Shown here piece by piece: positions 1-55,448 of a DNA stretch of 64,000 nucleotides. Where the stretch lies: positions 186,001-250,000 of the forward strand of contig NW_013657675.1 in assembly GCF_000142905.1 (NCBI RefSeq), given 5' to 3'. The translations under genes were made by a program, and so were the position numbers. Below the pieces are notes generated by a model. That model saw only the letters and a list, made by a program, of their open reading frames with translations. It was not told the DNA's origin and ran no database searches. The stretch is from Thecamonas trahens ATCC 50062. Taxonomy: Eukaryota; Protista; Apusomonadida. The first letter of the stretch is position 1; each line of letters opens with the position of its first letter.

Positions 1-1761
1 CCCGAGACGCAGGCTGTTGTCACCGCGACCTTTATGTCGCTTATCGACACGGTCGAGTCGCTGGAGATTGCGGCGTCGTCCATTGGGGCTTCCCTCACCG
101 CCCCGCAGACGCTTTCGGCGCTGGTGACGTACGCCTCGACTCCCGAGACGCTTGCTTCGGGCTTTGACGCCCTCCTTCGAGTTCTTGCCCTTGCCGCCGA
201 CGCGCAGGTGAAGAAGCACATGGCGCGCGGCGGCGGCGGCGACGACGTCGGCGTCGTTGGCGCCCATGGCTACCCGTTCCCGCCGGGCGTGTTTGCCTCG
301 CTCGCCGCGGCCTCGGCGCCGCCGATGGACGACATGGCGGGCGCCATGGGTGGCATGGTCGACTCGCCGGTCCCGGTCGAGAAGAAGCTCGGGACACAGT
401 GGAAGACATTGCGCGCAGCTTCGGCTCTCGGCGAGATCGAGGAGCTTGTGGCCATGGCTGTTCCGCTCGTCCCACTTCTTGTGGAGGACATTCGCCGCGC
501 CACCTCGACCTCGGAGCCGCTGGAGACTGCGTACTCGGCCACGCTCCCGCGCCGCGTCACCCTCGAGGCCATGCACCGTATCTCGGTCTTGGTCACCCTT
601 GTCCAGATCAACTCGCCCGCTATCGATCAGGCGCTTGTCGACCTTGACGTTGTCTCGCTCCTTCTCGACCTCTTTGTCGCCTCGCCCTCGAACAACGTCC
701 TCCACACCGCCGTCACCAACTTTGTCCTCGGCATCCTCCGCAAGTATCCGGGCTCGTTCGCCCTCCCGGCCTCGGCCACCCACGCCGTCGACGTCGGCCG
801 CAGTGGCGCCACCGTCGCCGACGCTACCGCTACGCTTGCGGCCGCTGAGGCCTACTCGGACGCCGCCGTCCCGGCCGTCGTCGCCGCCCTCCACGCTGCA
901 CTCGGGCCCGACGGCGCTGACCTGCCCGGCAAGCTTCTCGCCAAGTCGGCGGAGAACGCCGAGGCTGTCGCCTCACCCAAGGGCTTCCGCCTCCCCTCGA
1001 TGGGCCACGTGTGCATTCTCGGCAACGCGCTCAACGCCTCGCCGTTCTTTGGCCCGCTCCTTGCCGACTCGGGCCCGTGGGCCGCCTTTGTCTCTGCAGA
1101 GCTCTCCACCTTTAACGAGCTCAACACCAAGCCCATGGGCGCCGAGCTCACCGGCCCGCTGGCCTCGGACCCGCGCTACCACATGGGCGGCTCCGACGGC
1201 TCGGGCGGCCCGGGTGACTTGGGCGGCAACGCAGGGAACGCCGGCTCGGGCGGAGGCTCAGGCGAGATGCTCACCTCCATCGAGGACCTGCAGAACATCC
1301 TCTCGCAGCTCCTCGGGCCGGGCGCCGACCAGGCTCTCGCCGGCTTTGGCCAGGGCTCGGCCACCTTTGATGATGATGACGACGACATTGCCTTTGGCGC
1401 CGCCGTCGACGACGACGATGGCGAGTACGACGACGGCAACCCGTTTGCCGACGGTGACTTTCAGTTTGGTCAGGTGAGCATTCCTGACGAGTTTGACCCG
1501 GCCGAGGCCGTCGCTGACTCGGCTTCGACCGGCATCGTCATCCAGGACGGCGTCTCGCTCTCGGACGAAGACGAGGTCCCCTCCAGCGAACACGACAACT
1601 TTGTCGACGATGACGCCGACGCCGCCGCCCTCCTCGAAGCCGACGACGATGTCTCGGACGATGACGACAATGCCACGCCTGCTGCCGACGCCGACGCCGC
1701 GCCTGCCGCCAACGCCAGCGCTGAGGATGCCGTGGCCGATGGCGAGGCGTCACAGGCTTAG
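1..1761 (+). CDS. SIT4-associated (SAPS)/PP6 regulatory subunit, 5'-truncated
   Basis: Frame is open from base 1. Motifs LLDLF..SNNVLHTAV and RLPSMGHVCILGNAL match SAPS NNFLH and R.GYMGHL..I.N. Long acidic C-terminal tail. Confidence 0.8.
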   Translation, partial: PETQAVVTATFMSLIDTVESLEIAASSIGASLTAPQTLSALVTYASTPETLASGFDALLRVLALAADAQVKKHMARGGGGDDVGVVGAHGYPFPPGVFASLAAASAPPMDDMAGAMGGMVDSPVPVEKKLGTQWKTLRAASALGEIEELVAMAVPLVPLLVEDIRRATSTSEPLETAYSATLPRRVTLEAMHRISVLVTLVQINSPAIDQALVDLDVVSLLLDLFVASPSNNVLHTAVTNFVLGILRKYPGSFALPASATHAVDVGRSGATVADATATLAAAEAYSDAAVPAVVAALHAALGPDGADLPGKLLAKSAENAEAVASPKGFRLPSMGHVCILGNALNASPFFGPLLADSGPWAAFVSAELSTFNELNTKPMGAELTGPLASDPRYHMGGSDGSGGPGDLGGNAGNAGSGGGSGEMLTSIEDLQNILSQLLGPGADQALAGFGQGSATFDDDDDDIAFGAAVDDDDGEYDDGNPFADGDFQFGQVSIPDEFDPAEAVADSASTGIVIQDGVSLSDEDEVPSSEHDNFVDDDADAAALLEADDDVSDDDDNATPAADADAAPAANASAEDAVADGEASQA

Positions 1762-1889
1762 ACGAGCCCAAGCACAGTCCTCGAACCACCATCGATCCCC
1801 TATCGATTATCTACAACGTTGCCGCAGTACTGTAACACGCCCCCCCCCCTCCCTCCGTCCCCGACCCATACTCCTCCCCACACTAACTC

Positions 1890-3215
1890 ATGCTTCGCAA
1901 CCTCGTCCCGCGTCTCGCCACTACCGCCGCTACCGCGTCAAGGACCGCAGCAGCTGCCACAGCCCGTCAGGCCTCGTCGACGCCGGCTGACAGCGACCCG
2001 GTCATCGTGTCGACGGCCCGGACGGCCGTGGGCACCTTTGGCGGCTCGCTGGCATCGCTCACGGCGCCGCAGCTGGGTGCGGCAGCGGCGTCGGCTGCTC
2101 TTGCTCGCGCTGGCCTCTCGCTCACTCCGGCCGACGAGAAAAATCCGGTGACACAGGTCGCCTCGGAGCCGTTTGCCATCGACGAGACCTACTTTGGCAA
2201 CGTGCTGCAGGCCAACGTCGGCCAGGCGCCGGCCAAGCAGGTCGTCATCGGCGCCGGCCTCGGTGTCGGCGTCCCGTCGACGACGGTCAACAAGGTCTGC
2301 GCCTCGGGCCTTAAGGCTGTCATGCTCGGCGCCCAGGCTATCCGCCTCGGCGAGGCCAACTTTGTCCTTGCCGGTGGCATGGAGTCCATGTCGCAGGCCC
2401 CGTTCTACCTCCCGGACTCGCGCTGGGGCTCGCGCTACGGCCACTCCAAGGCTCTTGACGGCATTGCCCGCGACGGGCTCTCCGACGCTTACGACGGCTC
2501 CATGATGGGCGTCTGCGCCGAGGCGTGCGCTACTGAGCATGGCATCTCGCGCGCCGCCCAGGACGAGTACGCCACCCTTTCGTACCAGCGCGCTCGCGAG
2601 GCCGCCGCAGCCGGCCTCTTTGACCAGGAAATCGCGCCCGTCACCGTCAAGTCGCGCCGCGGTGAGTCGGTCGTCGACGAGGACGAGGAGCCCGCAGGCA
2701 TGGCCCTCGACAAGCTCTCTTCGCTCCGTACCGTCTTTAAGAAGGACGGCACTGTCACCGCGGGCAACGCCTCCAAGATTAACGACGGCGCTTCGGCCCT
2801 CGTCATCGCCTCGTACGGCGCCGCAAAGGCTGCAGGCCTCACCCCCATCGCCCGCATCCTTGGCATGGGCGACGCCTCCATGGAGCCCATCAAGTTTACC
2901 GACGCTCCTACTCCGGCCATCGAGCGCGCCTGCGCTCGCGCCGGCGTCGCCGTCTCCGACATCGACTACTTTGAGATCAACGAGGCCTTTGCCGTCGTTG
3001 CCCTCTGCAACGCTCGCCTCCTCGGCATCGACGTCGAGTCGCAGCTCAACGTCAACGGCGGCGCCGTCGCTCTCGGCCACCCCATCGGCTCCTCCGGTTC
3101 GCGCATCCTCGTCACCCTCGCCTCCATTCTGCAGCAGCGCGACGCCTCGCTCGGCGTCGCTGCCATTTGCAACGGCGGCGGTGGCGCGTCTGCTGTTGTC
3201 ATTGAGCGCATGTAA
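1890..3215 (+). CDS. ACAT1: Acetyl-CoA acetyltransferase (thiolase II), mitochondrial
   Basis: Catalytic motifs NKVCASG, NEAF, GHPIG and CNGGGGA. Arg/Ala/Thr-rich acid-free presequence MLRNLVPRLATTAATASR. Confidence 0.95.
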   Translation: MLRNLVPRLATTAATASRTAAAATARQASSTPADSDPVIVSTARTAVGTFGGSLASLTAPQLGAAAASAALARAGLSLTPADEKNPVTQVASEPFAIDETYFGNVLQANVGQAPAKQVVIGAGLGVGVPSTTVNKVCASGLKAVMLGAQAIRLGEANFVLAGGMESMSQAPFYLPDSRWGSRYGHSKALDGIARDGLSDAYDGSMMGVCAEACATEHGISRAAQDEYATLSYQRAREAAAAGLFDQEIAPVTVKSRRGESVVDEDEEPAGMALDKLSSLRTVFKKDGTVTAGNASKINDGASALVIASYGAAKAAGLTPIARILGMGDASMEPIKFTDAPTPAIERACARAGVAVSDIDYFEINEAFAVVALCNARLLGIDVESQLNVNGGAVALGHPIGSSGSRILVTLASILQQRDASLGVAAICNGGGGASAVVIERM

Positions 3216-4067
3216 GTGCCCCAACATGGCCGCTCTCCTGCCCGCCTCGTGGCTCGGGCCTGCGGGGAGAGTAGCCCTGCTCATGCCCTCATGCCCACTG
3301 TTTCCGGGATGGAACAACCTGACGTTACACGCCCCCCCTTCCCCCTCCTCGTCCTTCCCTCCCTCCCTCCCCCCCCCCCCCCCCCCCCCCCCCCTCCCCC
3401 CCTTTCCCTCTGCCTTCCTCACCCCACCCCTCTTCCGCCTCCACCACCGCCCACGCCCAATTTCGCCCCCACCACGTGGTCGGTTGCTGCATCGCTTAGC
3501 GCCGCTGCACCCGCTCCACCACTCTCCCTCACTCGCCACCTCCCCCAGCGTGCCCTCGCCACCTCCACCACACCACAACCCGGTTCTACCCCAGTACGCA
3601 TCCCCTCCCCGTCTCCCCTTCCCCCTCCTCCCCCCTTCCCCCTCTCCCCTCCCCCCCCCCCCCCCCCCTCCCTCCCTACGGCTGACCGGCTGCCACCACC
3701 ACATTTGGTGAATTCAGGGCTCCGGTGAAAATTGGGGTATCTGCCGGCAGAGCTCTCCAAACACGGCTGACCAAGGCCAAGTATCTCGCTCTTGTCTGTA
3801 CGCTGGCTTACGACACATCACCACGCATATCACTTACTCTCAGTGCTCGCCCTCCCCCCCCCCCCTCCCGTGCTTGCTCCTGTTCTCCTCGATCTTCTCT
3901 TGTCGTCTCTTACTGCAGTTGTGGTCGATTGGTGCCAGTAAGCCCGCCTGAGGAGTCAAGCTTGGTTTTGCCGGAGCCGCGCGGAGAAACGGCATATTTT
4001 TACAAAGGTCGGACAAGCCAAGCTACCGGTTTCAGCCGTATTCGATTCACCTGCATCAGGGCGCAGT

Positions 4068-40152: not shown

Positions 40153-43100
40153 TCACAGCCGGCGCGACTGGCCTTCAGCCATCCACACGTCCGGTCGGTC
40201 CTTGTCTGGATACCGCATGCTTTTCTTGCGGGCAAGCTTGCGCAGCCGCCGAAGCCGCTTCGCATTCTCGCTCTCCTCGGGGTCGGATGATGACGATGAC
40301 GACGCGTAGGACAGATCGTCCGACGAGCCCACGTGGAGTTCGCCCTTTTCCACGCGCGCCTTGGCCGCCGCAGCCGCAATGTCTGCCATCACACTCGGTG
40401 CATCGGTGCTGGCCGCGGGTACGCCTGGTGCCAATCGTGTCGCCTTGTCGGTCGTGCCTGCCGCAGCCGCCGCGCTTGCCACGGCAGTAGCCGATGGCGC
40501 CGCCGATGGTGCAACCGGAGGCGCTGCCGGAGGTGCACGTACGCCGTGGACCGGCAGGCGCCGCCGCAGCTCTGGCAAGAGCGACATGTAGTCCACGTGT
40601 CGCACGTGTGCTGCGTTCGCCGCCGCGCCCTCCACTGCGCTCTCGTCCATCTGCAGCTCGTCCGCGTACGCATGGCAGTACTTGGAGAGGAACCGGTGCC
40701 AAAAGTGCAGCGCCGTATTCTCGTCCGGCAGGTGTGGGAGCACCCGTGAACCTTCATCATCACCTCGTACCGCTCATCGGCGTCTGCCGCCTGAGAACCC
40801 AGGTCCATCACAAGCGCGATGCATGACTGCATCGCTTGCACCTGTGCTGGTGTCATCGCCACCTCTGACGACGCCGCCGCAACAGCTGCTGCAGGCGGCA
40901 CAACAGCAGGTATAGCAGCTGGCGGGGCGACTGTTGCGCTCATAACTTCCGGCTCGGGTGTATGCTCGACAACACCGCCGCCGCCGCCAAAGTGCGCCGC
41001 GTACGCCTCGGTCTCTGCCGTGAATGCATCCAGCTCAATCCCGCTCGCCTTGCGCGTCACGACGGTCTCACTAATCGCCACGCTCCCGTTGCGCATCCGG
41101 GCATTCAGCCGCCGCATCTTCCACTGCTTCCAGTTGCGACGAATCGTCCGCACAAAGGCAAGCCAGTTCATCGCCGCTGCAGGCACAATCCACGCCAGCC
41201 AAAGGCCAGCAAGGCCAAACGAGTCAGCGCTCCACTTACCATATCCGATCTGGTGCACAAGAGCGAGTCCGGCGCATGTCGTTCCCACCTGCACGCACGC
41301 CATCGCCCACCACAGCGAGAGGCCAACCTCGTTTCGAACGTTGAGCACCTCCCACACAAACCCAACCATGTTGAGATCGCGCAGATGATTCGCTCGTGCG
41401 TGTTCCACCGCAGATGCAGTTGCCCACAAAAGGCTCTCCACGCCCGCACTGCACAGCACCGCAACCATGAACAGCGCCACAAGCGACCCAGTACCCCAGT
41501 CGCCCGGCTGCGACGGGCCGCCCATAAACATCGCCACACACAGCGGTGTCAGGTAGAGCGTCGTCGCCACGCCAAGCGCTGCGCCAACCACTACATTCAC
41601 CCGCTTCCGCGCGATGAACACTCCGCGGTTGACAGAGAATCCAAAGACGAGCACAACAACGCCGACCACCGTCGACCACACCCCGTCATACCGAATCGAG
41701 ACAAGCGCCACAGACGCCGCCCACGGGAGCAGGTACAGAAAGAGAGCGGCGGCCAACACAAAGACCACGTCGTCAACCCACTGCACGCCGAGTACGCCGC
41801 CCGCGCGACGCACAAGACCACGGTGGAACACCCACGCAAGGACGCCCACCACGACTGTGCTGAAAGCCATCACCGCAAACAGTGCCGTCACAGAGAGCCG
41901 CTCGTCTGCATGCTGCGCAACCCTGGCCGGCGCACACGCCAGCCAAACTCCGGCCCACCGCGAGAGGCTCTCCACAATAACAAGCAGCGGCTCGTTGACA
42001 AAGCTAGTCCTTCCCGCGTACAGCGCCCGCATTCCGGCAGTAATCACAAACCTCGACCAGAGCCCGGGGTCGCGGAAGTGGCCCACAACCAGCGAGCCCA
42101 CCAGCCCGGCCCATGCCACATACGACAGGGCCACAACCAGGTAGCCCAGCGGCCATCGCGACGGCGGGTCATATCCTAACCGCGGCGCCCCAGTGGTGCT
42201 GTCGCCGCTAATAACGCCCGCGTACTGGCCGCCTCGTCCGTCAACAGAAACCATCCAACCGGCCGCGGGTGACCGGCAGTGCAGCGGCGCGCTCGTCTCA
42301 ACAACTACCGCCGCAGAGGCCTGGCAGGCCTGGACCGTGTCGGAGCTGTAGCATGCAGACTGTGCCACCGCCCACGTCGCCATCGCATGTGCTGTGCACG
42401 TCGTTGCAGGCTCAAAACACGGCATCGTCGCTCCGTCCACACGATCGCTTCCGCCGCCGCCGGTTCCAATCGCTCCCGCCGCGACGTCCAGTCGGAGCTC
42501 GCGTCCCGCCGGCGCAAGCAGAACGCCTGCAGCCTCGGCCCCGACAGAAGGCGCAAGCACAAGCCCGCTCCGCTCTCCCAGCACACGGATTGTCGGAAGC
42601 TCGTTCCTGACGGGAAGCGCGTGTTCCGGGCCTACTACAACCCAGTTGAGACTTGCGTCCTCAAACACCACCTCGCGCACGTACCGCTTGCGAGGGAGCA
42701 TGCCATCGCGAAGTACAATTTCCACCGTAGGCGGTCCAGCATCTGTGCCCCGGGCTCCAATCCGCATCGTGTCTGCTGTAAGAGTCACCTCGCGGTTGAC
42801 AACCGCGTACGGGGCCTCGCCCTCGTCGACATCAACCACAAACCGAACGCGTGCCTCCAGAGTTGAGACCTCTCCATTTCCTCGGACATCCAGCCCGGGC
42901 ATACCGGCTCCGTCAATGCTTGCACCCGAAGCCAACACAAGGCTGCTCCCACTTGCTGTCGTCAGCTGGACCGAGCCCCGCAGCCTTTTGGGCGCCGCGA
43001 TCTCTGGCCACGCTTCACCAAACGCGTACTCTCCAGCAAACGCCGCAGACGATGACGTGTTGAGCTGGACGTGCGACCCGCTGACGAACAGCGGCGAGCC

Positions 43101-46100
43101 GCCGCGGATGGTTGTGGCCGTGCCAGGGCTCGTCACTACCTGCAGCGCAAACGAGTACCCAGCGTTAGTCTCAAACATCATAACACCTTCGGCCTCGACA
43201 ATCGTGCTCATCCGCACCCCGCTCCACCAGCCAGGACGGTTGTCCCGTCCGCCCAGCGGCTCCACCTCGACCTCGGCGACGGCCATTGCCCGTGCATCCA
43301 GCACCAGCGACCGCACCGTGTGACCCGAGCCCATCGATGCCACAGACACGTTGCCTGCAACAAGACGGACAACGTCGGCCTCGGACATCAGCAGCGGACC
43401 CGGGAGGCAGTTCATGAGCTGCGCCGATGTGAGCGCCCCTGGAAGCGCGTCCACAAGACGCAGCATCCAGCTCGATGCGGCACGCGCGCCCGCTCCGCTC
43501 CGCGGGCGCAGGCATCCGTGCCAAAACTCGAGCGCGGGCTCGGCACTCATGTGGCTCATCGGGAATGATGCCATCCGCGTCTGGCTCCCAACCGCCACAA
43601 ACGTCGTCGTCTCGGCTGCCGTCACGTCGCCGGAAATTGCCACGCTTGCATTCGTTACCACAACCACCGGCCCACTGTACTGCAGCGCACTACCATCCGA
43701 CGCCGCACCAGGGAACCGGACCGAGGTCCGCGCGTCGGCGCCGTGTACAAACAGCTCGGCCCCGTTCGGCGCCCCGGTCACCGTCACTTCAAGCCCTGAC
43801 GCATGTGTGAGCGGAATGTCGTCCACAGGCGTTGCGCCGACTGCGTTCAGCACCAGCCCGCTCGGTTGGTAGAGTGTCGCTGTAAAGAGACCAAAGCTGA
43901 TGCTGCCCGCTTCGGTGTTGTCAGCAAAGCGCTGGATTTTGGCCTCGGGTGGGAGCGCCGTCGCAAAGTGCATGTCACCCGCTGGAATGGTGACGGTCAC
44001 TACTCCATCCGACCGCTCCGGATAGCCGTGGACAACGCCGGTAAACGCGGCTGCTGTGTAGCTCGGCAGCGCAAACTCGACCGCATAGTTGGACGCTGTC
44101 TGCATCTGCAGCGTAACCTCGCCATTCTGCCCGCCGCCCACAACCCGCACGCACTGCTCAGGAGTGCCCTCGTACCAAAGCCGCACGCCATCCAGTCCAG
44201 TCATGTTGAGCACACTCTTGTATGCGCACCCAGCCTCTGAAATCGGGAGCAGCGGCGTCTCCGAGCCAGGCGCAGGGAGTGCCGGAGGGCCCACAGGACT
44301 TGACACGTCCAGCGGCGCGTCAAGCGAGCCGCGGCACTGGACTGGCCGGCCTGACACATGCGCTGTGTCAACAGCTGTCAGCCGCAACACCGCCAGCGAC
44401 GACGCAGCAAGCGGATTGGTCGACATCGGGGCAAAGGACCCGGGTTCGACCATCGATGGCGGTGCGAGTGAGCCGTCCACGTCGTAACACACCAGCAGTG
44501 TGTCGCCCTCGCCGTCCTCGCCGAGATCAACAGCCGAAGCGCCAGCCGCGTTCATCACGCACACCGAGTCGGCGCCCGCGCCGAGAGCCGCTGTGAGCGT
44601 GGCGCTCGGTGACGCGGCATCGCTCCACGAGACCCGGTCGTTGCCACCGCCGGTGTCGAGCGTGAGGCTGATGGTTTGCAGGCTGCGGCCGACCACCACA
44701 TCGTGTGCGTCGCCAGTAGACACCTCAAACGCAACTTGCGCTGTCGGCGCCACATTCACAGCGCATCGCGCTGTGCTGCAGTCGTCAAACGACGGCGCAC
44801 CGGGAAGCGCGCTCCGCGCAGCCTCGCACACCCACGCACTGGGCACAGAAGTCTGGATGAGTGGTTCGGGGTCGGCTGCGTACGCGTCGGCGAGCCCAAA
44901 GCTCGAGAAGCATCCGTTGTCCAGCAACAGCCGCTGCGCCGGTGCGTTCACGCCTGCCGCCGCCGTCACTCGCATCGGGAGTAGCGGCTCGGTGTTGGCC
45001 GGCGCCACCAGAATCGGAGCGGTAATGCCGCTCAGCGGCGCAGACGTCTGCAGCAGCGGTGACGTCGATCCGCTAACATCGACTCCGATCCGCAGATCAA
45101 ACGTGCCCGTCACAAGAACAGGATCCGAGTTGGCCACAATCTGCACAAAGTTGACCGGCGGGCCGACAGCAGGCCGAGGCACCGGCGGTAGCCTGATCAC
45201 CACTGACGTGCCAAGTGTACCGGCTGCAAATTCGACGTGGTACGCCGTCGATGCACCAGCAGTGCTAAAGTCCAGCTCCAGCCGCTCGATGGCCTCAAAG
45301 AACACGTTGACCGGCTGGAACGCCCGCAACGGGTCGTACAGCACAATGCCGCCCCGGTTGATGACCACATGGGTCCGTGGGCCTGCTGCCGTCAGATCGT
45401 CAAGCACCAGCGTGTCACGCTGGTCGGCCGCTAGCGACCCATACACGTACACCGTGCAGCCAAAGCTGGACACATCTCGGAGCACCGTCGTCATGTTGCC
45501 GCCGCCCTGCATCCGTACCACGTGCTGCGACGAGCCAGAGCATCCGGTCACCGTCGTCGACATCTCGGTCGACGCATCGCCGGCGAGCGTGACCTCGACT
45601 CGTGCCCCGTCGGCAGGCGACATCACCGTTGACTCGAACACTGCCCCGCCCGACGCGGTCACGTCGAGCGCCAACGTGTGCACGTTGACATGCGAGACCG
45701 AGTGGTTGCCGCCGCCGTCGGTGAGGACCAGCGAGCTTGTCGACGACGCGAGTTTGGTCACCTCGCCGGCCGCTGCCGCCACGCCCACATGCAACGTGTT
45801 GGTCACCGCCGGCGCGCCGCGGAACGCCACGTGTCCATGCACAGCCTCGAACGCAGGCAGAACAAGCCGTGTGTCGACAGGCGCGCCATTAAAGGTGGTG
45901 AACCGCGCCGGAGGAGAGTCGCTGAGCGTAAACGTGCTCTCCTGTGACGTGTCGACGCCGGAAATGGTGAGGTTGAACAAGCTGGCGGGGTAGCTGAGGG
46001 CGAGGGCGCCAAGCCCACTCACCGACTGCTCACTCACAGCCAGCGTATGTGCGCCGGTCAGTGCAATCGAGAGCTCCATCGGCGAGCCGGTCATCACCAG

Positions 46101-49100
46101 CGGATGGCCAAAGCTGGCCAGCGAGCCCGAAAGCCGCACTCGCCCGCCAGCGCCGGCCTCGAGCGTCGTCGCACACGGCAGCCCGCTCACGTCGTAGATG
46201 AGTGCCGCCAGCGGCTGGTCAATGACCACGGCGCCGCAGGTGCCAAAGGTAGCGCCCGACGCCGCGCCGGCCGCAAGCCGGTTCGCTGACAGCACCACCG
46301 TTCGCGCAGTCGACAGTGTCGCCACGTTGCCGCTCGTGGACGACGTCGTCGCCAGAAGACTTGCGTACGGCGCCAGTGGCAGTCGCACCGTCATTCCGCT
46401 CGCCGACGGCAGCGAGACCAGCTTGTTGGTAAAGCCAAGGTCAAAGACAAAGGCCGAGCCCGATGGAGGACCGTACGTCCCAATCGTCTCTACCGAGTTG
46501 ATCGGCACCGCCCGCGTCAGCAGCGAGGCGCCGGCAAGATGGTTCGCCGGCTTGAACGAGGTGACCAGCTGGATGCCGGAATCGCTCAGAGCCTCATAAA
46601 CTGCAAACTTGGGCAGGGCTTCAAGCGACATGTCGCTAGCCAGGTCCGGAGCCAAATCGTTGGCACCAGAGAGAAGGCCCATGTTGAGGGCGCCTGTCGG
46701 CGAGGCCGCCGGTGGGAGTGGGAGCGGGGCTGCCGTAACCAGCGGCCACGACCAGGTGTGCGACCACTTGGCCACGGTCTTGTAGCCAAAGAGCGCAAAG
46801 ACCTTGATTTTGGCCGTCACAAACAGCTCCAGCGAGAGCTCCTTCTCGAGCGCGTCCCACACTCCGTACGCCTTGACCATCCACGCCAGCTCGTCGACAG
46901 TGAGCCACGGCTGACCGTTGATCGACACAAACCGGAGCTTGCCCACCAGCTGGATGCCTACCGCCGCCGAACCCTTGACCACCAGCAGGTTGACCGTTGC
47001 ACCGCCGGCAATGCCGACCGACGCCTGCAGCTGCCATCGCTTCGATCCGTTGTCGTTGATGGTTTTGATGGCCACGCCGCGAGCGATGAGCCCGACGTTC
47101 TTCTGCGCTACCGCGTCGACAACTGCCGACGACATGACGGCCAAGTCGCCGACGTACACCGTCACCGACATAGGAATCGCAATGTCCACAGTCACAATTG
47201 GCACCGGCCACACCACCCACGACCAGGTCGGCGCCAGCGCAAACCGTGCAGGTGCCACATAGTATCCCACAATTGGCGTGTCGAGACCAAAGAAGATCTT
47301 GATCACGTTGTTGGCAATCGAGCCGTGGAGGAGATACAGCCGAAACCCTGATGGCGAGTCGTCGGCTGGCTGGTTCGCCGAGCCGCCCATGAGTTCCAGC
47401 AGCTCGTTGAACTCCTGGTTGACAAACGGATCGGTGACCGCCGAAATGACCTCCGGATCCGGAAGCGGTGACTTGGCAATGGTCACCAGATCACCTGGAT
47501 GCAGCGCATTGCTGTCGGCCGCCAGCATGAGGTCTGCGCCGTGGCGGAAGGACGGCAGGTGGGCAAACGGCGGTGCGTCGCCGGCAAACGGTGTCGTCGC
47601 CGCCTCGAGCATGACCTCGAGATCCTGAAGCGACATGTGCAGGTCGCACGGCCCGCCGGTGTTGGCTGAAGCCAGTGACTTGAGGCGGACCGCAATGTCG
47701 ACAATGTTGATGAACTTCTCAACAGCCTCGAGCACCCCGTCGGCAGAGCAGTCGTAGATGCCGCAGAGCTCAACGGCCATCTCAAGCGCAGAGAGCCGGC
47801 GGCCGAAAATGATGTCGGTGTACTTGATCTCGCGAACGAGGTACCCGTCGGGACCGATAAACGGCTCGAGCGGGGTCAGCACGTCGTCGGCCTGCCGAAG
47901 CACGCCGCCGACAAGATCGGTGAGGAAAGAGCCCATGCAGAGCTTCCCGTTGCTCAGCTCAAACGTCGGTGGTGCAGCAACGAACGAGCTGCCATCGCCG
48001 ACGCTTGCGGTCAGCGACCAACCGAGCGCGAGGTCCCATTCGACATGAGGCGCGAGCTTGAGCAGCGCACCCGAGCCGGGACTCTCCAGCTCGGCGTTCT
48101 CGATGAGCCTGTTGAGCAAGCCACCTAGGCCGAGTGTCGCCGGGCCGCCGAGCGTCGCACCAAGCGAGAGCGTCGCGCTGCGGAAAGCCGGCGCCACGCT
48201 CAGCTCGAGCGAGAGGCCCGACGAGCCGGGTTGTGGTGACATCTCGAAGCCGGCCACCGCCAGTTGGCCGGCAAGCGAACAGCCCGGATTGAAGACCACT
48301 GCCGCGGAGAACGAGGCCACCTCGGGCGCAGTCTCAAAGTCAAGCCGCAGGCCTCGGTCACGTGAGTACGCGAGGCCAAAGGCCAGCTGCCAGTCGAGCG
48401 CAAGATCCAGATTGCAGTCGATCTCGAGCTCGGCCAGCCCGCGGGCGCCAAGCCGGAACTTCAGCTCGTCAAAGGCAATGAGCTCGGCGTCACCAAGCAC
48501 AAACGGAAGATGCAGGTTGTCGGTGAGCTCGCCGGGTGGCAGACTCGGACACGAAACCAGAAGGTCCTCGAGAACGTCGCAGAACGCGGCGAGAACCTGC
48601 TCCCACACGAAGCGCGGGATGGCAAACGGCGGGAGGAGCCGGGCGCGGTCGTGGCGCAGATCGGTGACCACGTCGTTGATCGTGGCCACCAGCTTGCGCA
48701 GCGTGACCGGCGCCATCAGTCGCTCGCGGAGTCGTGCCACGGCGGCGTCTGCAAAGCCCGGGCCGAGGAAGCCGACGTCGAGATTGGCCTTGCCGAGGAA
48801 GATCTCGACGCGGGTGAGGAACTCACCGACGCCGTCAATCCATGCGTTGAGCAGCGCCATGACGTCCTTGGTAAAGAAGGCCTGGATGCTGAGCTCCCCA
48901 AGCGCGTCGACAATGGCGTCAACAACGCCCGAGCCGCAGTTGATACCGGCCTCGACAACCGACGCCGATGCGCGCCTGTCGAGGAAGGCCGCCAGATCCG
49001 GAACCGCCACCGCCAGAGAGCACACCACGTTCTCGTTGATGGAGAGGAGTGCGTTGAGACTGGCCGAGCCGGTAAGGCTGAGGTCAAACCTGGGGAGGAA

Positions 49101-52100
49101 GCCCGAGGCGGCGTCCGGCGGCGCAGCGACGGCGGCCAGCGCCGCGTCAGTCACGTCAATGTGGACTTCGCCGAGCCGGAGCGCCAGCGCGCCAAAGCTG
49201 AGCGTCAGCTCGCCGTCAAAGTCGACGCCGGCGGCTGTGCGGATGTACGAGCTTCCTGGCTCAACAGACACCGCCGCAGTTGCCAGATTGAGCGAAACAA
49301 CGAGCTGGTACTCGACGGTGGCGGTGGCAACAAGATCCGCAGACGCGCCTACTCCAACCGGGAGGCTTGACGACGCGCCGAGCAGTTGATCCAGATCGAG
49401 CCGCGCAGAGGTGGTTACATTGGCGGCAAAAGGTCGCCGCATAAGCGTCAGCGAAATAGTGGCGGTGTCAGTAAAGGCGCCGTGGGCACAGACGGTAAAC
49501 GCGGCGCCGTTCTGCGACGGCAGCTCGGCCAGGATCATGTCGGCGAGTGAGCAGAGAACTGTGAGCGTTAGCGGCTCTTCGAGGCTTCGAGTGCAGACTG
49601 CCAGCCGCAGGGCATCCAGCTTCGCCACCACCGAGTCAGCGCCGAGCTTGGCGAGCTTAAAGTCTGTGCCGGGTAGCCGAGCATTGGCAATGGGCGAGTC
49701 AAAGACTACGGCCGAGGCGTAGACGAGTGTGTCCATGACATCGCAGGCGGATAGCGATCCGGTCGTCAGAGCGTTGTATGCAGCGAGGGCGTCAAAGCCA
49801 CCGGTCCAGCTTGCCGTCCAATCGTAGCTGAGCGCCGCAAGTTCTGGATCAGACAGAATGAGGCCGGCGTCAACGCTCATGCGCAGGTGCAAATTCGGCA
49901 GGTCCGGGAATGAAAGGGTGAGGACCTGAAGGGCGACGTGTGTGACGTCGAGTCCGGCATCGACGTCGAGGGTCAGCGCAAAGGTGCCAAAAAGCTTTGA
50001 GGTGTCCATGACGGCATCGACGAGCGAGGCGACCGGCGTGAACGCCGGTGTGCCAGGCGCCGGGCCGGCGCCGAGATGCAGATTGACAAAGGCTGATGTC
50101 GAGCCGGTGGTGAACGACGTGATGCCCACACGCCCGGTGAGGTCGAGGAGCTCGGCGGTGAGGTTGGCGGTGAGGCCGAGCGCGAGCGATTGTGCCACCA
50201 TGCGGACTTGCGACGCCGGCACGCCTGTGCCCTCGGCGAGCGCCGGGATGGTCGACGCAGTGACCTTGAACGAGATTGGGACGTAGAGGAGCGAGTTGGC
50301 ACTGTCCTCCACCGGCGACGCCGTGAGCTTGACCTGGAACGCCGAGTCGGCGGCGACGACACCAGTGGTCGACGACAGCGCCGACGACGCGTTGTACAGC
50401 CGCGCAGAGAGCGAGGTATACGGCACCGCCGAGATCATTTCTGGCGCCGGGAGCGCGGCCGAGGCCGCGGCAGCGACTGCTGCGTAGATGGTGGCGTTAA
50501 AGTACTCGCCCGGCGGAAGAGTGATGGCCAGCAGCGCCTCCTGGTAGACTGGCGGCGCCGCGCCGCCGGGTCCGCCCTTGGCGTGGACGTTGTAGCCCAA
50601 AGTGAGGGTGGCAGTGTTGTTCGGCGCAACGACGAGCGCCTCGTTGAGCGGGCGCGGCTCGGCTTCAGAGCCAAAGTTGGTGATGAGGAGCGCAGCGCCC
50701 GAGCCGGATGGCGGCGCGCCGAGGACAGCGCCAAATCCGCCAGAGATCGCAACCTTGGCTCCGCCGGCGAGCTTGCCGGGGAGCGGCGACGAGAGTGAGA
50801 TGGCGTTGCCGAGCGTCGCAAACGAGGTCTGCATGGCAATTGGCGGATCAATCTCGTACTCAAACACAGCGTCGAGCGAGAACATGTACGCATCTAGCGT
50901 GGGCGGGTAGTACGCGGTCCAAGCTGGTGGGATGATCGAAGCGAGATCGGCGACCGGAACCGAGACCAGTCGCGGCACAAGGAGCGAGCGCGCCGACGGC
51001 GGAGAAGGACCGACGCCGCAAGGACCGAGAGGTCGATGAACGACGAGAACTGCGGGACAATGGCGGTCGAGCCAACAGTGACCTCAAACGGAGTGGCGAG
51101 CGGGAACGGCCCATCGGCGAGGCCCAGGGGATTGGCGACCACCGCAATGCGCAGCGACCGCACCAGGCCCGGCAGCCGGGCGCGAATAGTGAGTGCTGAC
51201 GGTGCGGAGATGGTGGTCGACAGCGGGTCGGCGTCATCGTCGTCGGTGTCGAGGCCAAAGACGAGGACGCGGGCAAAGGCGCCGCACTCGGGTCCGGTGA
51301 GCGCAGCGTTAAGGAGGTGCGGCCAGTCAGCCGGTGCCGTCAGCTGCCCGGCAATGGTACAGACAGTGGCGAGTGCCGGGATGTTGTTGAGCGAGATCTC
51401 GAGGGTCTGGTTGAAGACGGACGGCGGAGTGGCGAGCGCGGGCGAGGGGAGCGCGGCCAGAATTGTGGCGGTGTCTGTGGCGTCGCCTGGGCGGGCCATT
51501 CGCGCCAGGGCCAACTGCTCCATTCGCGACGGAGTGGAGAGCGCACCTACCGAGGTCCCGAGCGGCGCAAGCTCGAGGTCGAGCGTACCGCCGTCGGCAA
51601 AGAGCGAGGAGCCGAGGCGAAAGACGGTTGAAATGAGCGCGTTGAGCGCGCGCGACGGCACAAGGTCGAGTGGGACAGCAGCTGCGCCGGCGGCTGGTGA
51701 GGTCAACGAAGTGACTGAGAAGACCAGTGGCGATGGCAGGATCTCCGGATTGTGGAAGAGGTTCGGCGTGCTGAGATGCAGGGCATAGGTCTGCGGCGCC
51801 AGCGCGCCGCCAAGGAACGACTGGGTGGAGCAAGTGAGATCAAGGGTGAGCGCAGCCGCGAGCGGGTTCGGTGCTCCGAGCGAATGTGTGACCGAGAGGT
51901 GGAAGCTGCCGTCGAGGGTGAGTGCCGGCTGCATGCCGATGGTGACCGGGACCACAAAGCGCGAGACGTTGAGCGCTGCGGCAAAGTCCAGGTCGGTGAT
52001 GGTGGCGCCGGTACTGGGAGCCAAGGTGGCCGCTAGGCGCAGGTTTGCTGTGATGGGCATCGGGCCGAGCGAGGCCGAGCCAAAGACCGGGAACCACGGT

Positions 52101-54655
52101 GCCATGTTAGAGCGCAGGTGAGGCTGCAGTCGCGACGAGGCCACAAGGAGGAGCTCCAGAGTCGGCTCGGGTGTGAGCGAGAGGCCAAACGATGTCGTGA
52201 GCGTCGAGCTATCCGAGTTGATGGTGAGTGCGGCGGTGCGTGTGAGGAGCGCGGCAAGATCGAGCGAGGAGGTCGGTGCGTCGGGAAGGATGTTGGCAAG
52301 CACCTCTGTGAGGAGAGTGGCGATGTCCAGGGTGTCCGAGAGCGAGGCCGGTGAGTACGGCAGCGGATCAAGGCCGTGGAAAATCCAGGGTGAAGCTGAG
52401 GCCAGCGAAGCTGCGGCGGACGAGAGAAGCGGGCCAAAGGTCGACCGCGGCGAGGTCACCAGCGTGTCGAGGTGGGCGAGCAATGGCGAGGCGAGCGAAA
52501 GCGCGCCGCGCGGAGCGCCGAGCGCCGCCGCTGCCGAGCTTGCAAAGTTCGCCAGGGGGAGCGAGACCGTCGGCACCAGCGGCGCCGCCGACGCAGTCAG
52601 CGATGGTGGCGCGGCGAGGCCGACGTGCAGCGTGAGGGCCGGGAATAGGGTGTTCGCGTCGCCGGTGTCGAGGCTGGCCAGCTCGAGGGTGAGAGCGAGT
52701 GAGCCATCGATAGCGACAGGACCCACGTTGAGCGCCGGCTCGAGCGAAACGATGGTCGAGAGCGAGATAGCGCCCGTGGCTGAGGCCGAGGCCATGTAGC
52801 CCGCAAGCGAGGCGTCGAGGGTAGGGATACTGAGGCCCGAGGTCGAGCCTGGGACCATGTTCTCGAGGGCGGCAGCAAGCGAGGAGATGGCACTGTTGAG
52901 GGCCGAGGCTGCGGCGTCGAGGGCGGCGTCGAGGACGGCTGTCAGCTTTGGCAGCGTGGTGATGGCGGCATCGTCGAGTGTGAGGAGCGCTGAGAGAGCA
53001 AATGTAGTGCCAGAGGGGTCAAACGAGACATTGAGGGCCATCGCGTAGGGCGGCGGGACAAGGAGCGGGACCTTCGCGGCGGCGTACCATGAGATAAAGT
53101 CAAGGAGCGATCGCTCAGCCGGCAGGCTACGAGCCTCGTAACTAGCCAGGAGAGCGTCGAGTGCCGGGCCGGAGGCGGGAAAGAGTGCGTCGATGGCGGC
53201 GTCAAAGAGACGCGGCGGGGTGCGGGGCGAGGACGAGGCCGCGGCGCTGAGCGAAGCAAAGAGCGAGGTGACTGAGGCTGTAAGAGAGGGTGTGGTCGTC
53301 GTCGGGGCAGGAAGGAAGCAAGCGCGAGCCGGAGTAAAGACATTGACGACCGGCAGGGCGTGAGGCTGGCCACCGGTGGAAGGCCAGATGATGCCGGTGA
53401 GAAATCCGCGGAGGGTTGGCGGGTGCGCGTTAAGAGTGGCGTAGACGGCGACGATGTCATGGGCGACAATGAGATCGGGGAGGGCAAGCGCGTTCGGAGT
53501 TGTGGTCGCCGAGACGGCGAGGGTGACGACGGTGTCGTTGGTCGGGCAGGAGAGCGAGACCATTGTGTGGGCAGTGCCGGAGAGCGGGACGACCGAGGCG
53601 AGGCCCGTCGAGGCATTGTAGGCGATCCACATCGAGGCAACGGAGGACGACACAACGGCATCGTTGTTGAGAACAGCTGGCGAGCAGTGTGGGAAGAGGG
53701 CCGTGGCGGCGAGGTTGGAGGCGACGAGCCGCTGGAGCGGCGAGTCGCAGGCGAGGCCGGCGCAGGCAGCCTCGGCAAAGACGTAGAGACCGCGCTCACC
53801 ATAGGCGCGCTCGCCGTACCGCAGCTGCGCGTCATGGAAGAGGTCCGAGTCGGCGTCGATGAACAGGCCACGGGCGGTGAGTGACGAGTCGGCGAGGGTG
53901 GCGGCGGCACCGGTCATGCGGACGTTGACGTCGGTGAGCGGGGCGCGGAGCTGGGCTGCGAGGGCGTGAACTGCGTCGAGAACAACAGGGTCTTGGTAAG
54001 TATTGAAGAGGACAAGAGCAGGGAGGCCGTCAAAGGCGGCCGAGTCGTGGACGTAGACACCGGCATCAGGCGAGGAGGCAGAAATCGAGCCGGACCAGGG
54101 CAGGAGCGGCGGGAGCGAGGCGATGCCTGCAGCCGAGTACTCGATGTGCGGGAGGAGGAGCGAGAACGAGCCCACCATGTCGATGTTTGGGTATGCCGGC
54201 GAGGGCGCCGCGGTCGAGGCAAGCACAAAGGCCATATCGATGTGGACAGCAACAGCAAGTGCGTCAGCGGCAGTCGGCGGGACGGTGAGCGAGACCGAGA
54301 CGGTGAGCGAGCCCGAGGCGACGGCAACAGGACCCAGTGCGCCGTCCATGTCGGCGAAGAAGGCCGAGGTAGGATTGAGGGCCAGCGCCGTCGATGTGGC
54401 GGTCAGCGGGAGGGTCGGTAGGGCCGAGCAGGGGGTGGTGCCTGCGGCGGCGGAGATGAAGTCTGCCACCGAGGAGAGGACAGGACCGGAGAGCGAGTCG
54501 GGGGCAAGCGGAGCATCATAGGCAATGCGGTTGAGGAGGGTGCATGCGGTGTCTGCAGGCGGGGAGCTTGAACCATACGCGCCCAAGGTGCACAGTAGTA
54601 GGAGCAGAGTCAGCGTGGCCGTAGCTGCCCGTCCCGTGCCTGGTACCGTGGGCAT
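40153..54655 (-). CDS. Giant (~4,830 aa) signal-peptide surface protein with multi-pass C-terminal membrane domain; apparent one-base frameshifts near 51001 and 40744
   Basis: Signal peptide MPTVPGTGRAATATLTLLLLLCTLGAYG. ORFs 50894-54823, 40389-50978 and 40153-40743 join by +1-base corrections. About 8 hydrophobic helices at about 41160-42155. Confidence 0.75.
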
Positions 54656-54908
54656 GCGGGGCTTGCGGGGGAGAAGGCGTGCACGCGGGGAAGGGGGGGG
54701 TTGGAGTCGAATGGCGAATTTGGAGCGGGGCGGTGAGCGGGGAGGAAGGGGGGGGGGAGGGGGGGGGGGGGGGGAGGATTTAGGTGTGATGGAGCGCGAG
54801 TAGGTGTGCGGTGGCCATGGCAAGATCAGCGGCTAGAAAGTGGGGAGGGTAGGTGAGCGTGAGGCGCAGTGCGCGGCGCGCGATGGGGTGTGCAGGTCCA
54901 TGCTGATG

Positions 54909-55016
54909 CGGTGTACCGACCCTGGTGTGGTCTGCCGTCCTTGGTGTGGTCTGCCGTCCTTGGTGTAGTCTGCCGACCCTGGTGTAGTCTGCCGACCTTG
55001 GTGCGGCGTGCCGATC
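54909..55016. repeat. 19-bp minisatellite (GGTGTRGTCTGCCGWCCYT), four full and two degenerate units
   Basis: Seen directly, upstream of the giant gene. Confidence 0.9.
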
Positions 55017-55209
55017 AGGCAAGAGCCGATCGGATGAGCAGTCAGTCCGTCAGTCACTCAGTCCGTCAGTCAGTCGGGAGGGAAGAGGGAGGGAGCGGGC
55101 AGGCAAGGCCGAGCCGAGTCGAGCCGAGGCAAAGCGCTTGCAACGAGGCCAACAACACGACCAACAGCAGAGGCCAGAACCGAGCCCCTCGCCCATCCAC
55201 CCAGCCCAA

Positions 55210-55448
55210 CTACAAGGCACGGCCCTTGTGGACGTCGTAGGCACGGGTGGTGGGAAAGGCGAGCGGCAGGGCGTCGGCCGAGTATCCGAACCACCAGCGG
55301 AGGAGGTAGTAGGCGAGCTGGCCGCCCACGCCGAGGGCAGCACCCGGATAAAGGGCACCACGAGGTAGACCTGGACAGAGTGGAGGAGCTTCTGCACAGA
55401 GAAGAGCGAGGCAAGCTCCTTGTTGGCCTCGTACGGCTGCTCAGACAT
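55210..55448 (-). CDS. Mim1/Tom13-like small single-TM protein (one-base frameshift near 55345)
   Basis: Corrected product MSEQPYEANKELASLFSVQKLLHSVQVYLVVPFI(R/Q)GAALGVGGQLAYYLLRWWFGYSADALPLAFPTTRAYDVHKGRAL*. The shifted frame has strong C-ending codon bias. Confidence 0.6.

What the first reader, a model, noticed from the sequence alone, without database searches (positions are those of the whole stretch)
40153..54655. Giant chimeric surface receptor: bacterial RTX/adhesin-like ectodomain on a multi-pass membrane domain
Seen: signal peptide, more than 4,000 aa of beta-rich ectodomain with no evident introns, degenerate Gly/Asp RTX-like turns (LDTGGGNDRV, LGAGADSV, LGEDGEGDTL at about 44490-44670), about 8 TM helices and a cytosolic tail. 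From recollection, the ordered blocks LDWQLAFGL, GSFLTDLVGGVLRQADDVLTPLEPFI, IFFGLDTPIVGY, GGATVNLLVVKG...LTVDEL and GALNMG (about 48400-46680) resemble giant Ca-binding RTX-related proteins of Planctomycetes and Cyanobacteria. Inference: a horizontally acquired adhesin, rerouted to the ER pathway and fused to a GPCR- or TRP-like anchor, possibly for gliding, surface attachment or prey capture. Best candidate for an undescribed system here; frame breaks would hide it from annotation.
Basis: partly seen in the sequence, partly recalled or inferred. Interest (0 to 1): 0.85.

Follow-up and report, generated by a model that had tools for sequence, protein, structure and literature searches.

The report
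Giant protist membrane protein, bacterial-type module
This is one real gene of about 4,830 codons in the gliding marine protist Thecamonas trahens, encoding a huge outward-facing protein held in the membrane by nine helices; it belongs to an undescribed family found in many crawling protists whose middle part is related to giant bacterial RTX-type surface proteins, and at least one of its two frame breaks is an assembly error.

Summary
Window 54655..40153 (minus strand) is one gene, already public as "uncharacterized protein AMSG_01258" of Thecamonas trahens (4,798 aa). That model bridges both frame breaks with mini-introns of 74 and 32 nt. Contigs of three other sequencing runs carry one extra base at 51000, so the 5' break is a 1-base assembly deletion. 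The 3' break is probably the same kind of error but was not tested. The real product is about 4,834 aa.

It has a signal peptide, a 4,158-aa Cys-containing ectodomain, a Cys-rich stalk, nine hydrophobic helices and a cytosolic tail. It is not a Thecamonas-specific chimera. The whole architecture is conserved and collinear in a family without Pfam matches that includes Capsaspora, Balamuthia, Naegleria, Phalansterium, three Thecamonas paralogs and many environmental protists.

A module of about 350 aa (o2 826-1182), and more weakly the flanking segments including the GxGxD turns, is homologous to giant (3,800 to over 10,000 aa) bacterial DUF4347/RTX proteins. On the module tree, eukaryotes form one side of a long branch, so the link is single and old.

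No GPCR- or TRP-like fold could be shown. The function is inferred: a Ca2+-stiffened surface adhesion or sensing receptor. The scan reached the same conclusion on a paralog (s1-743421).

The parts
40153..54655 (-). Whole coding region of AMSG_01258, about 4,834 codons once one missing base is allowed at each of the two frame breaks. ATG at 54655-54653, stop at 40155-40153.
54572..54655 (-). Signal peptide, aa 1-28. A conserved Cys follows shortly after, as in other family members.
   Evidence: Sequence. N-termini of homologs show the same signal peptide plus Cys pattern.
51000..51001 (.). Site of a 1-base deletion in the assembly: + strand GG should read GGG. This creates the apparent o1/o2 frame break. 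The corrected reading is ...SVLLPPSARSLLVPRLVS...
   Evidence: an extra G behind 51000 in the one contig of each of runs X1, X7 and X6 that crosses the site.
50924..50997 (-). The 74-nt GT..AG 'intron' of the public gene model. It is in fact coding sequence.
   Evidence: mapping of P0096. (no joint in the contigs; the extra base restores the frame). (family profile runs through: o1 to position 1039, o2 from 1047).
46599..49898 (-). Best-conserved core of the ectodomain (o2 aa 361-1460). It contains helical bundles, sheets of long beta hairpins and a beta-barrel-like part.
   Evidence: 87 homologs. (AlphaFold2, pLDDT 70). (no convincing solved relative, best Z 8.5).
47433..48503 (-). Module shared with giant bacterial DUF4347/RTX proteins (o2 aa about 826-1182). 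It holds LDWQLAFGL and GSFLTDLVGGVLRQADDVLTPLEPFIGPDG.
   Evidence: bacterial profile against this protein scores 50 bits at o2x 976-1141 (o2 about 969-1134).
44484..44726 (-). Cluster of four GxGxD-type turns spaced about 20-25 residues apart (TGGGND, GAGAD, GEDGEGD...). I infer a short Ca2+-binding beta-solenoid.
   Evidence: positions. (conserved in the family). (aligns to repeats of like period in the bacterial proteins). (no HemolysinCabind hit).
42276..42425 (-). Cys-rich juxtamembrane stalk (C-x2-P-x3-C ... C ... C ... C). One Cys is invariant and four are nearly invariant in the alignment.
   Evidence: alignment A5.
41151..42140 (-). Membrane domain with nine hydrophobic helices. Topology is N-terminus outside, C-terminus inside.
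   Evidence: hydropathy; 11 K/R in the 40 aa after the last helix. (homologous to the family's TM domain, profile E 1.6e-7). (helical model, pLDDT 55).
40156..41150 (-). Cytosolic tail of about 330 aa. It has a basic juxtamembrane stretch, Ala/Pro-rich linkers, a helical-looking segment around the 3' frame break, an acidic Ser cluster and a basic KRLRRLRKLARKK stretch.
   Evidence: No paralogous copy of the tail in the genome.
40720..40776 (-). 3' frame break. The shift from the o2 frame to the o3 frame must lie downstream of the TGA at 40776-40774. The public model bridges it with a 32-nt GT..AG 'intron' (40751-40720). I infer a second 1-base assembly error.
   Evidence: GC3 switches frame near 40750. 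Not tested with reads.

Best explanation
Shown. Window 54655..40153 (minus strand) is a single, selectively maintained gene of Thecamonas trahens (AMSG_01258). It encodes a membrane glycoprotein of about 4,834 aa. In order it has a signal peptide, a 4,158-aa Cys-containing ectodomain, a Cys-rich stalk, nine membrane helices (N-terminus out, C-terminus in) and a cytosolic tail of about 330 aa. The 5' frame break is a 1-base assembly deletion.

The protein belongs to an undescribed family without Pfam matches, typically 3,800-4,900 aa. The architecture is conserved end to end in Apusomonadida, Filasterea and Amoebozoa and in many environmental protists. The Heterolobosea (Naegleria) models match the ectodomain but show no TM domain. 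The middle of the ectodomain shares ancestry with the central part of giant bacterial DUF4347/RTX surface proteins: strongly over about 350 aa here, more weakly and collinearly over family-profile positions about 1400-3100. The link is a single old one, not a recent capture by Thecamonas.

Inferred. The 3' break is a second 1-base assembly error.

I infer that the protein travels through the ER to the cell surface. There the long ectodomain, stiffened by disulfides and by a short Ca2+-binding GxGxD solenoid, would bind substrate or prey surfaces as its bacterial relatives do. The nine-helix domain and tail would couple that contact to the cell interior for adhesion, gliding or crawling, or prey capture.

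My confidences: about 0.9 for identity, gene structure and family; about 0.85 for the bacterial relationship; about 0.4 for the surface adhesion or sensing role.
For: One gene:
- An extra G at 51000 is present in X1, X7 and X6, in the one contig of each that crosses the site.
- The family profile is collinear: o1 matches positions 3-1039 (E 4.8e-49) and o2 matches positions 1047-3730.
- The Balamuthia homolog aligns across the junction.
- The public model AMSG_01258 uses the same start and stop.

Selection: 12 of 18 differences from environmental strains are synonymous in the proposed frames.

Family:
- 87 representatives were found among 1.8 billion proteins.
- The named ones are Balamuthia, Naegleria x2, Capsaspora, Thecamonas and Phalansterium.
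- Unnamed ones sit beside eukaryotic genes such as RabGAP, IF4E, Dynamin, Mito_carr, SRP54 and Filamin.
- The signal peptide plus C-terminal multi-TM architecture recurs.
- The TM domain is homologous by profile.
- There are three paralogs in the same genome.

Bacterial link:
- P0077 has HemolysinCabind at E 7e-11.
- P0097 comes from a gammaproteobacterial MAG.
- Shared motifs are visible in the alignment.
- 14 bacterial loci carry the module, within ORFs of 3,800 to over 7,400 aa.
- Two scanned proteins have DUF4347, RTX repeats and Cadherin_4.
- The family profile scores 67-88 bits on them in collinear pieces.
- The bacterial profile scores 50 bits on this protein.
- The GxGxD repeats align.
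- The tree separates eukaryotes from bacteria with 99% SH-aLRT support.

Topology: 45 Cys and 18 sequons lie in the ectodomain, there are nine helices, and the post-TM segment is basic.
Against: - No localisation, binding or expression data exist. RNA support is limited to a few metatranscriptome contigs, which could be DNA carry-over.
- Neither the core nor the TM domain has a recognisable solved fold. The best core match is Z 8.5 to small beta-barrels, which is within the noise range, and the TM model has pLDDT 55.
- The first GGxGDD motif cluster of the family is degenerate in this paralog.
- Ca2+ binding is inferred from motifs alone.
- The function of the shared bacterial module is itself unknown.
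- The 3' frame break was not verified.
- The direction of the bacterium-eukaryote transfer cannot be read from an unrooted two-group tree.
Confidence: 0.55

Rival explanations
1. One reading: a bacterial adhesin recently acquired by horizontal transfer in the Thecamonas lineage, rerouted to the ER and newly fused to a GPCR- or TRP-like anchor.
For: A real bacterial-type module and RTX-like turns are present.
Against: - The complete architecture, including the TM domain, is shared with Capsaspora, Balamuthia, Phalansterium and many protist contigs.
- All 28 eukaryotic modules lie on one side of a branch of length 1.8.
- Identity to bacteria is only about 23-27%.
- The N-terminal 1,300 or so and C-terminal 1,000 or so profile positions have no bacterial match.
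- No GPCR or TRP signature was found.
Confidence: 0.03
2. Three separate genes, or a decaying pseudogene, with the frame breaks real.
For: Two frame shifts are present in the assembly. The paralogs on C55 and C27 also show one break each.
Against: - The 5' break disappears in three other runs.
- The family profile runs straight through it.
- 12 of 18 polymorphisms are synonymous.
- The out-of-frame continuations are Arg/Cys-rich junk, whereas the shifted frames read like protein.
- GC3 switches frame at about 40750.
Confidence: 0.04
3. Same gene and family, but a different job. Either a protein of the endomembrane, phagosome or lysosome lumen, or a protein whose nine-helix domain is a channel or transporter gated by the ectodomain (analogous to polycystin-1), rather than a plasma-membrane adhesion receptor.
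For: A signal peptide plus a multi-pass anchor does not specify the final compartment. The TM domain is conserved in the family. Weak, non-significant profile hits to K+ channel pore regions were seen (E 0.02). The family occurs in phagotrophs.
Against: Nothing direct. The closest relatives of the central module are bacterial cell-surface giants. No channel or transporter family is detected.
Confidence: 0.25
4. The shared module moved from eukaryotes to bacteria, or both inherited it independently of any adhesin role, so the 'bacterial adhesin origin' is the wrong way round.
For: - The tree is unrooted.
- Bacterial modules are much more alike (branches 0.4-0.9) than eukaryotic ones (1-3.6) although they come from six phyla, which fits recent spread among bacteria.
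- Occurrence in bacteria is sporadic: 4 of 201 Planctomycetota.
Against: In bacteria the module sits in proteins built of typical bacterial parts (DUF4347, RTX repeats, bacterial cadherin) and the flanking segments are collinear too. The GxGxD repeat type is a bacterial hallmark.
Confidence: 0.13

Closest known systems
Unnamed eukaryotic family: AMSG_10070 (Thecamonas paralog), CAOG_08011 (Capsaspora), NAEGRDRAFT_52947 (Naegleria gruberi), C9374_011231 (N. lovaniensis), QOT17_000772 (Balamuthia), a Phalansterium transcript
   Same: A collinear match over nearly the whole length (profile positions 3-3730 of 4079). The signal peptide, conserved Cys pattern, core module, GxGxD cluster and Cys-rich stalk are shared by all, and the C-terminal multi-pass domain by most.
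   Different: Only 20-28% identity. This paralog has a degenerate first GGxGDD cluster, a divergent TM domain and a long private cytosolic tail. All members are annotated 'hypothetical', and I found no paper citing them.
Giant bacterial DUF4347/RTX surface proteins, for example the 6,167-aa ORF of Nitrincola lacisaponensis (L044), the 3,800-aa ORF of Thiohalophilus (L041), and ORFs in Fimbriiglobus, Nitrospina and Gaiellaceae
   Same: A homologous central module with motifs such as LDLGSF(I/L)xD(F/L)xGxxLxxxxDVLxPLxxxIGPDG, collinear weaker flanking segments, and GxGxD turns with a period of about 20 residues.
   Different: The bacterial proteins have an N-terminal DUF4347, tandem canonical RTX nonapeptides and a bacterial cadherin-like domain, and the bacterial-type fragments have very few Cys. 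No membrane domain was looked for in them. The protist proteins have a signal peptide, many Cys, a nine-helix anchor and none of those Pfam domains.
RTX adhesins such as LapA and the Marinomonas ice-binding adhesin MpIBP, whose RIV domain is a Ca2+-bound beta-solenoid with a 19-residue coil (from my own knowledge, not tested here)
   Same: One GxGxD turn per coil of about 20 residues would fit such a Ca2+-bound solenoid. Both are giant extended surface proteins.
   Different: No detectable sequence or Pfam match to these proteins. The solenoid fold of the 44484-44726 segment was not modelled.
Polycystin-1 and adhesion GPCRs (analogy of architecture only)
   Same: A signal peptide, an ectodomain of several thousand residues, a juxtamembrane stalk, a multi-pass domain and a cytosolic tail.
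   Different: No REJ, PLAT, PKD_channel, GAIN/GPS or 7tm_2 hit. There are nine predicted helices, not 7 or 11, and no fold match.

Membership tests
Canonical RTX proteins (Pfam PF00353 HemolysinCabind) | Tandem GGxGxDxUx nonapeptide repeats detected by the family model | tested here: not met
   No hit at E up to 1 in this protein or in 11 family members. There is one GG.G.D in 4,798 aa. The turns are about 20 residues apart, not 9.
Canonical RTX proteins (Pfam PF00353 HemolysinCabind) | C-terminal type I secretion signal and no membrane anchor | tested here: not met
   The protein has an N-terminal signal peptide and nine C-terminal membrane helices.
Bacterial DUF4347/RTX giant surface proteins | N-terminal DUF4347 domain | tested here: not met
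   Present in L041 and L044. Absent here and in the protist family.
Bacterial DUF4347/RTX giant surface proteins | Central conserved module (LDLGSFISDFAGP...IGPDGFLNKRIPLLSD type) | tested here: met
   67-88 bits; 50 bits on this protein.
Protist giant multi-pass family (AMSG_10070 / CAOG_08011 type) | Collinear full-length profile match, with a signal peptide and a C-terminal multi-pass domain | tested here: met
   o1 E 4.8e-49; o2 1,076 bits; TM domain E 1.6e-7.
Adhesion GPCR / polycystin-1 / TRP | GAIN/GPS plus 7tm_2, or REJ/PLAT/PKD_channel or ion_trans domains | tested here: not met
   No Pfam hit. No PDB sequence hit. The Foldseek best hit has E 0.09 and TM 0.16 on a low-confidence model, so the fold itself remains undecided.
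CREST/ceramidase-type 7TM hydrolases | Match to PF05875 or relatives above threshold | tested here: not met
   Only 12.3 bits (E 0.11, cut-off 32.5) at o2 3016-3114. Not seen in 11 family members.

The most novel reading that the evidence does not exclude
An early eukaryote took over the central part of a giant bacterial RTX-type adhesin and welded it to a signal peptide, a new N-terminal region and a nine-helix membrane domain. This created a class of giant surface receptors, still uncharacterised, that crawling and gliding phagotrophs (apusomonads, filastereans, amoebozoans, heteroloboseans) use to grip substrates or prey. It would be a pre-metazoan adhesion system, independent of integrins and cadherins, sitting next to the animal lineage.
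Probability: 0.3. Interest if true: 0.75.

Novelty: new variant of a known kind. Interest (0 to 1): 0.55.

Why it matters
Thecamonas and Capsaspora are reference organisms for the origin of animal cell adhesion and motility. A conserved family of 4,000-5,000-aa membrane proteins with no Pfam domain, no literature and a demonstrable tie to bacterial giant adhesins is an unexplored candidate for substrate or prey contact in crawling protists. It can be tested directly in Capsaspora or Naegleria, for which genetic tools have been reported (my own knowledge, not checked here).

Practically, the public models of this gene and of its paralog AMSG_10070 contain artificial mini-introns that hide single-base assembly errors. 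The deposited protein sequences are therefore slightly wrong.

Tried and rejected
Family and sequence searches:
- Pfam on the three pieces, on two homologs and on 11 family members gave nothing.
- NCBIfam gave only low-complexity noise on the tail.
- The PDB sequence search with o2 and with profiles A5 and A7 gave nothing significant.
- Word-indexed homology searches with the TM domain gave no hit. With the module region the search returned only the gene's own public entry.

Structure:
- AlphaFold2 of the core gave pLDDT 70. Foldseek and VIA-align returned only generic long-strand or small-barrel matches (TM up to 0.13, Z up to 8.5), so I rejected them as fold assignments.
- AlphaFold2 of the TM domain with a 15-sequence alignment gave pLDDT 55. 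The Foldseek best hit had E 0.09, so I treated it as uninformative.

Alignments:
- An alignment of the TM fragment with whole proteins (A2) misplaced the fragment and was discarded.
- A1 was too large to fold.
- The search for related loci with A3 had no stretch conserved enough.

Other attempts:
- A metagenome scan for a 28-mer next to the 3' break found no contig.
- The ESM Atlas was busy on four attempts.
- Searches of the own genome found no paralog of the N-terminal 1,218 aa or of the tail.
- A real 74-nt intron was considered and rejected.
- GC3 profiles are noisy in the Ala/Pro-rich stretches and give only modest support for the 3' frame switch.
- Literature searches on accession numbers and on Thecamonas giant proteins found nothing relevant.

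Full report
**What is in the sequence.** On the minus strand three collinear ORFs run 54823..50894, 50978..40389 and 40743..40153. I call them o1, o2 and o3. The first ATG (54655) opens a classic signal peptide. It ends with nine hydrophobic segments (o2 2947-3276; window 42140-41151) followed by a very basic stretch. The part before the membrane domain is 4,158 aa with 45 Cys and 18 N-glycosylation sequons. The region is 63-67% G+C.

**Organism and annotation.**
- The assembly is a 28.7-Mb eukaryote.
- One paralog found in the same genome is AMSG_10070 of Thecamonas trahens ATCC 50062, on a contig of exactly the length of our contig C55.
- The gene itself is public as "uncharacterized protein AMSG_01258", 4,798 aa.
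- Mapping that protein back shows the same start and stop. It also shows two GT..AG mini-introns, 74 nt (50997-50924) and 32 nt (40751-40720), placed exactly at the two frame breaks.
- The gene is therefore not hidden from annotation.

**The frame breaks.** Both breaks need one extra base, or an intron of 3n+2 nt.

For the 5' break:
- Laying public runs on 49800-55300 showed one change of length: an extra G behind 51000.
- It is present in the one contig of each of three runs that crosses the site: an estuary metagenome, a marine metagenome and a 2020 run of the organism.
- No joints were seen.
- With that base, o1 reads straight into o2 (...SVLLPPSARSLLVPRLVS...).
- A profile of 11 full-length relatives matches o1 at positions 3-1039 and o2 from 1047 onward, so the "intron" is coding.

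The 3' break lies downstream of the TGA at 40776-40774. The out-of-frame continuation is Arg/Cys-rich junk, and GC3 switches to the o3 frame near 40750.

The real product is then about 4,834 aa.

Of 18 differences from the environmental strains, 12 are synonymous in these frames. This indicates purifying selection.

RNA support is weak. A few metatranscriptome contigs lie on the gene. In another species (Phalansterium) a 4,536-aa member is encoded on one Trinity transcript.

**A conserved protist family.**
- HMMER of o2 361-1460 against 1.84 billion representatives gave 87 hits, mostly 2,000-4,900 aa.
- The named ones are Balamuthia, two Naegleria species, Capsaspora, Thecamonas and Phalansterium.
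- Unnamed ones lie on contigs beside eukaryotic genes. These include a gut-protist contig from human-gut metagenomes, which is not human DNA.
- Homologs align over 2,000-2,600 aa.
- Many homologs have the same signal peptide plus Cys motif at the N-terminus, and most full-length ones have a C-terminal cluster of 7-9 hydrophobic helices. Exceptions include the two Naegleria models, which show no such cluster.
- The TM domains are very divergent, but a profile of ten of them finds ours (E 1.6e-7, collinear).
- The same genome holds three paralogs, on C55, C27 and a partial one on C63.
- Neither this protein nor 11 relatives hit any Pfam family, and I found no paper that mentions them.

The "chimera" is thus an old, family-wide architecture and not a Thecamonas invention.

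**The bacterial relationship.**
- Among the weak hits, a set with almost no Cys matches o2 about 837-1182.
- One of them (P0077) carries true RTX repeats (HemolysinCabind, E 7e-11).
- The nearest relative of another comes from a gammaproteobacterial MAG.
- The alignment shows long shared motifs. An example is ours, GSFLTDLVGGVLRQADDVLTPLEPFIGPDGYL, against bacterial LGSFISDFAGPVLEAVGDVLGPLEWLIGPDGFL.
- A scan of species genomes with the bacterial module found 14 loci. They come from Rhodospirillaceae, Fimbriiglobus (a planctomycete), Gaiellaceae and other Actinomycetota, Chloroflexota, Nitrospina, Thiohalophilus and Nitrincola.
- All but one of these loci (L042, 822 aa) sit inside open frames of 1,372 to over 7,400 aa; most run off the fetched stretch, so these are minimum sizes.
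- 4 of 201 sampled Planctomycetota have the module, in frames of up to 10,603 aa.
- Two proteins scanned whole carry N-terminal DUF4347 and RTX repeats, and one also a bacterial cadherin domain.
- The protist family profile scores 67-88 bits on these proteins. The strong match covers positions about 1957-2440. Weaker collinear matches cover about 1400-1630, 2560-2715 and 2966-3115.
- The last of these weaker matches is the GxGxD cluster, which aligns with repeats of about 20-residue period in the bacterial proteins.
- A bacterial profile scores 50 bits directly on our o2.
- On a maximum-likelihood tree of the module, 28 eukaryotic and 11 bacterial sequences are separated by one long branch (SH-aLRT 99).

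This means a single old link. The direction of transfer is not resolved. The N-terminal 1,300 or so and C-terminal 1,000 or so profile positions, including the TM domain, have no bacterial counterpart.

**Structure.**
- AlphaFold2 of the core (pLDDT 70) shows helical bundles, sheets of 15-20-residue hairpins and a barrel-like part. The GSFLTDL... motif is a long helix.
- Foldseek and VIA-align give only generic matches.
- The TM model is all-helical but of low confidence, and matches nothing significant.
- A GPCR- or TRP-like fold is therefore neither shown nor excluded.

**How it probably works.** The topology (N-terminus out, C-terminus in) and the relationship to surface giants of bacteria are shown. 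The mechanism that follows is my inference.

The protein would reach the cell surface. Its disulfide-bonded ectodomain, with a Ca2+-bound solenoid, would act as a long adhesive or sensing arm. The nine-helix domain and the tail, with its basic, acidic-Ser and helical segments, would link contact to the cell interior.

Rivals are an endomembrane or phagosomal role, or a channel-like role of the TM domain.

**Verdict.** The family is undescribed, though this scan had already met it on a paralog.

Noticed in passing
G000:C55:237210-237328 (paralog AMSG_10070; loci L011/L014): The public model of the paralog has a 119-nt 'intron' without GT..AG ends between aa 880 and 881. Its sequence encodes VPGWAAYF, homologous to the coding PPAWTAYY of our gene. 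This is probably another single-base assembly error bridged by the annotator.
   Followed up: partly
G000:C27:172292-186288 (loci L010/L013): A third paralog consists of a 4,082-aa open frame plus a 631-aa open frame holding the TM domain. The two overlap by about 140 nt, which is a frame break just before the membrane domain. The C27 and C55 copies are nearly identical in the module and at the C-terminus (phmmer 1.6e-182; tree branches 0-0.05), so the duplication or gene conversion is recent.
   Followed up: partly
G000:C63:744-5165 (locus L012): A 1,474-aa open frame matches family profile positions 1700-3045 only. It is a partial or truncated fourth copy without a detectable N-terminal part or TM domain.
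   Followed up: partly
window 54584-54951: No contig of any of the four runs lies on the stretch just upstream of and around the start codon. The tool skipped repeats at 54737-54784.
   Followed up: no
L034, L035 (Gaiellaceae and Thermoleophilia MAGs); G076, G143, G177 (Planctomycetota): The bacterial relatives are extremely large. Uninterrupted frames exceed 7,400 aa and run off both ends of 22-kb loci, and three Planctomycetota have frames of 8,712-10,603 aa.
   Followed up: partly
L018, L019 (contigs from human-gut metagenomes): A 4,277-aa family member (P0032) lies beside RabGAP-TBC, eIF4E and ELAPOR-like genes on two independent gut-metagenome contigs. I read this as an intron-poor gut protist carrying the family, not human DNA.
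   Followed up: no
window 51264-52081, run X16: One metatranscriptome contig joins 52081 to 51264 with 8 foreign letters and only about 24 letters on each side. I take it as a chance or foreign match, not a splice.
   Followed up: no
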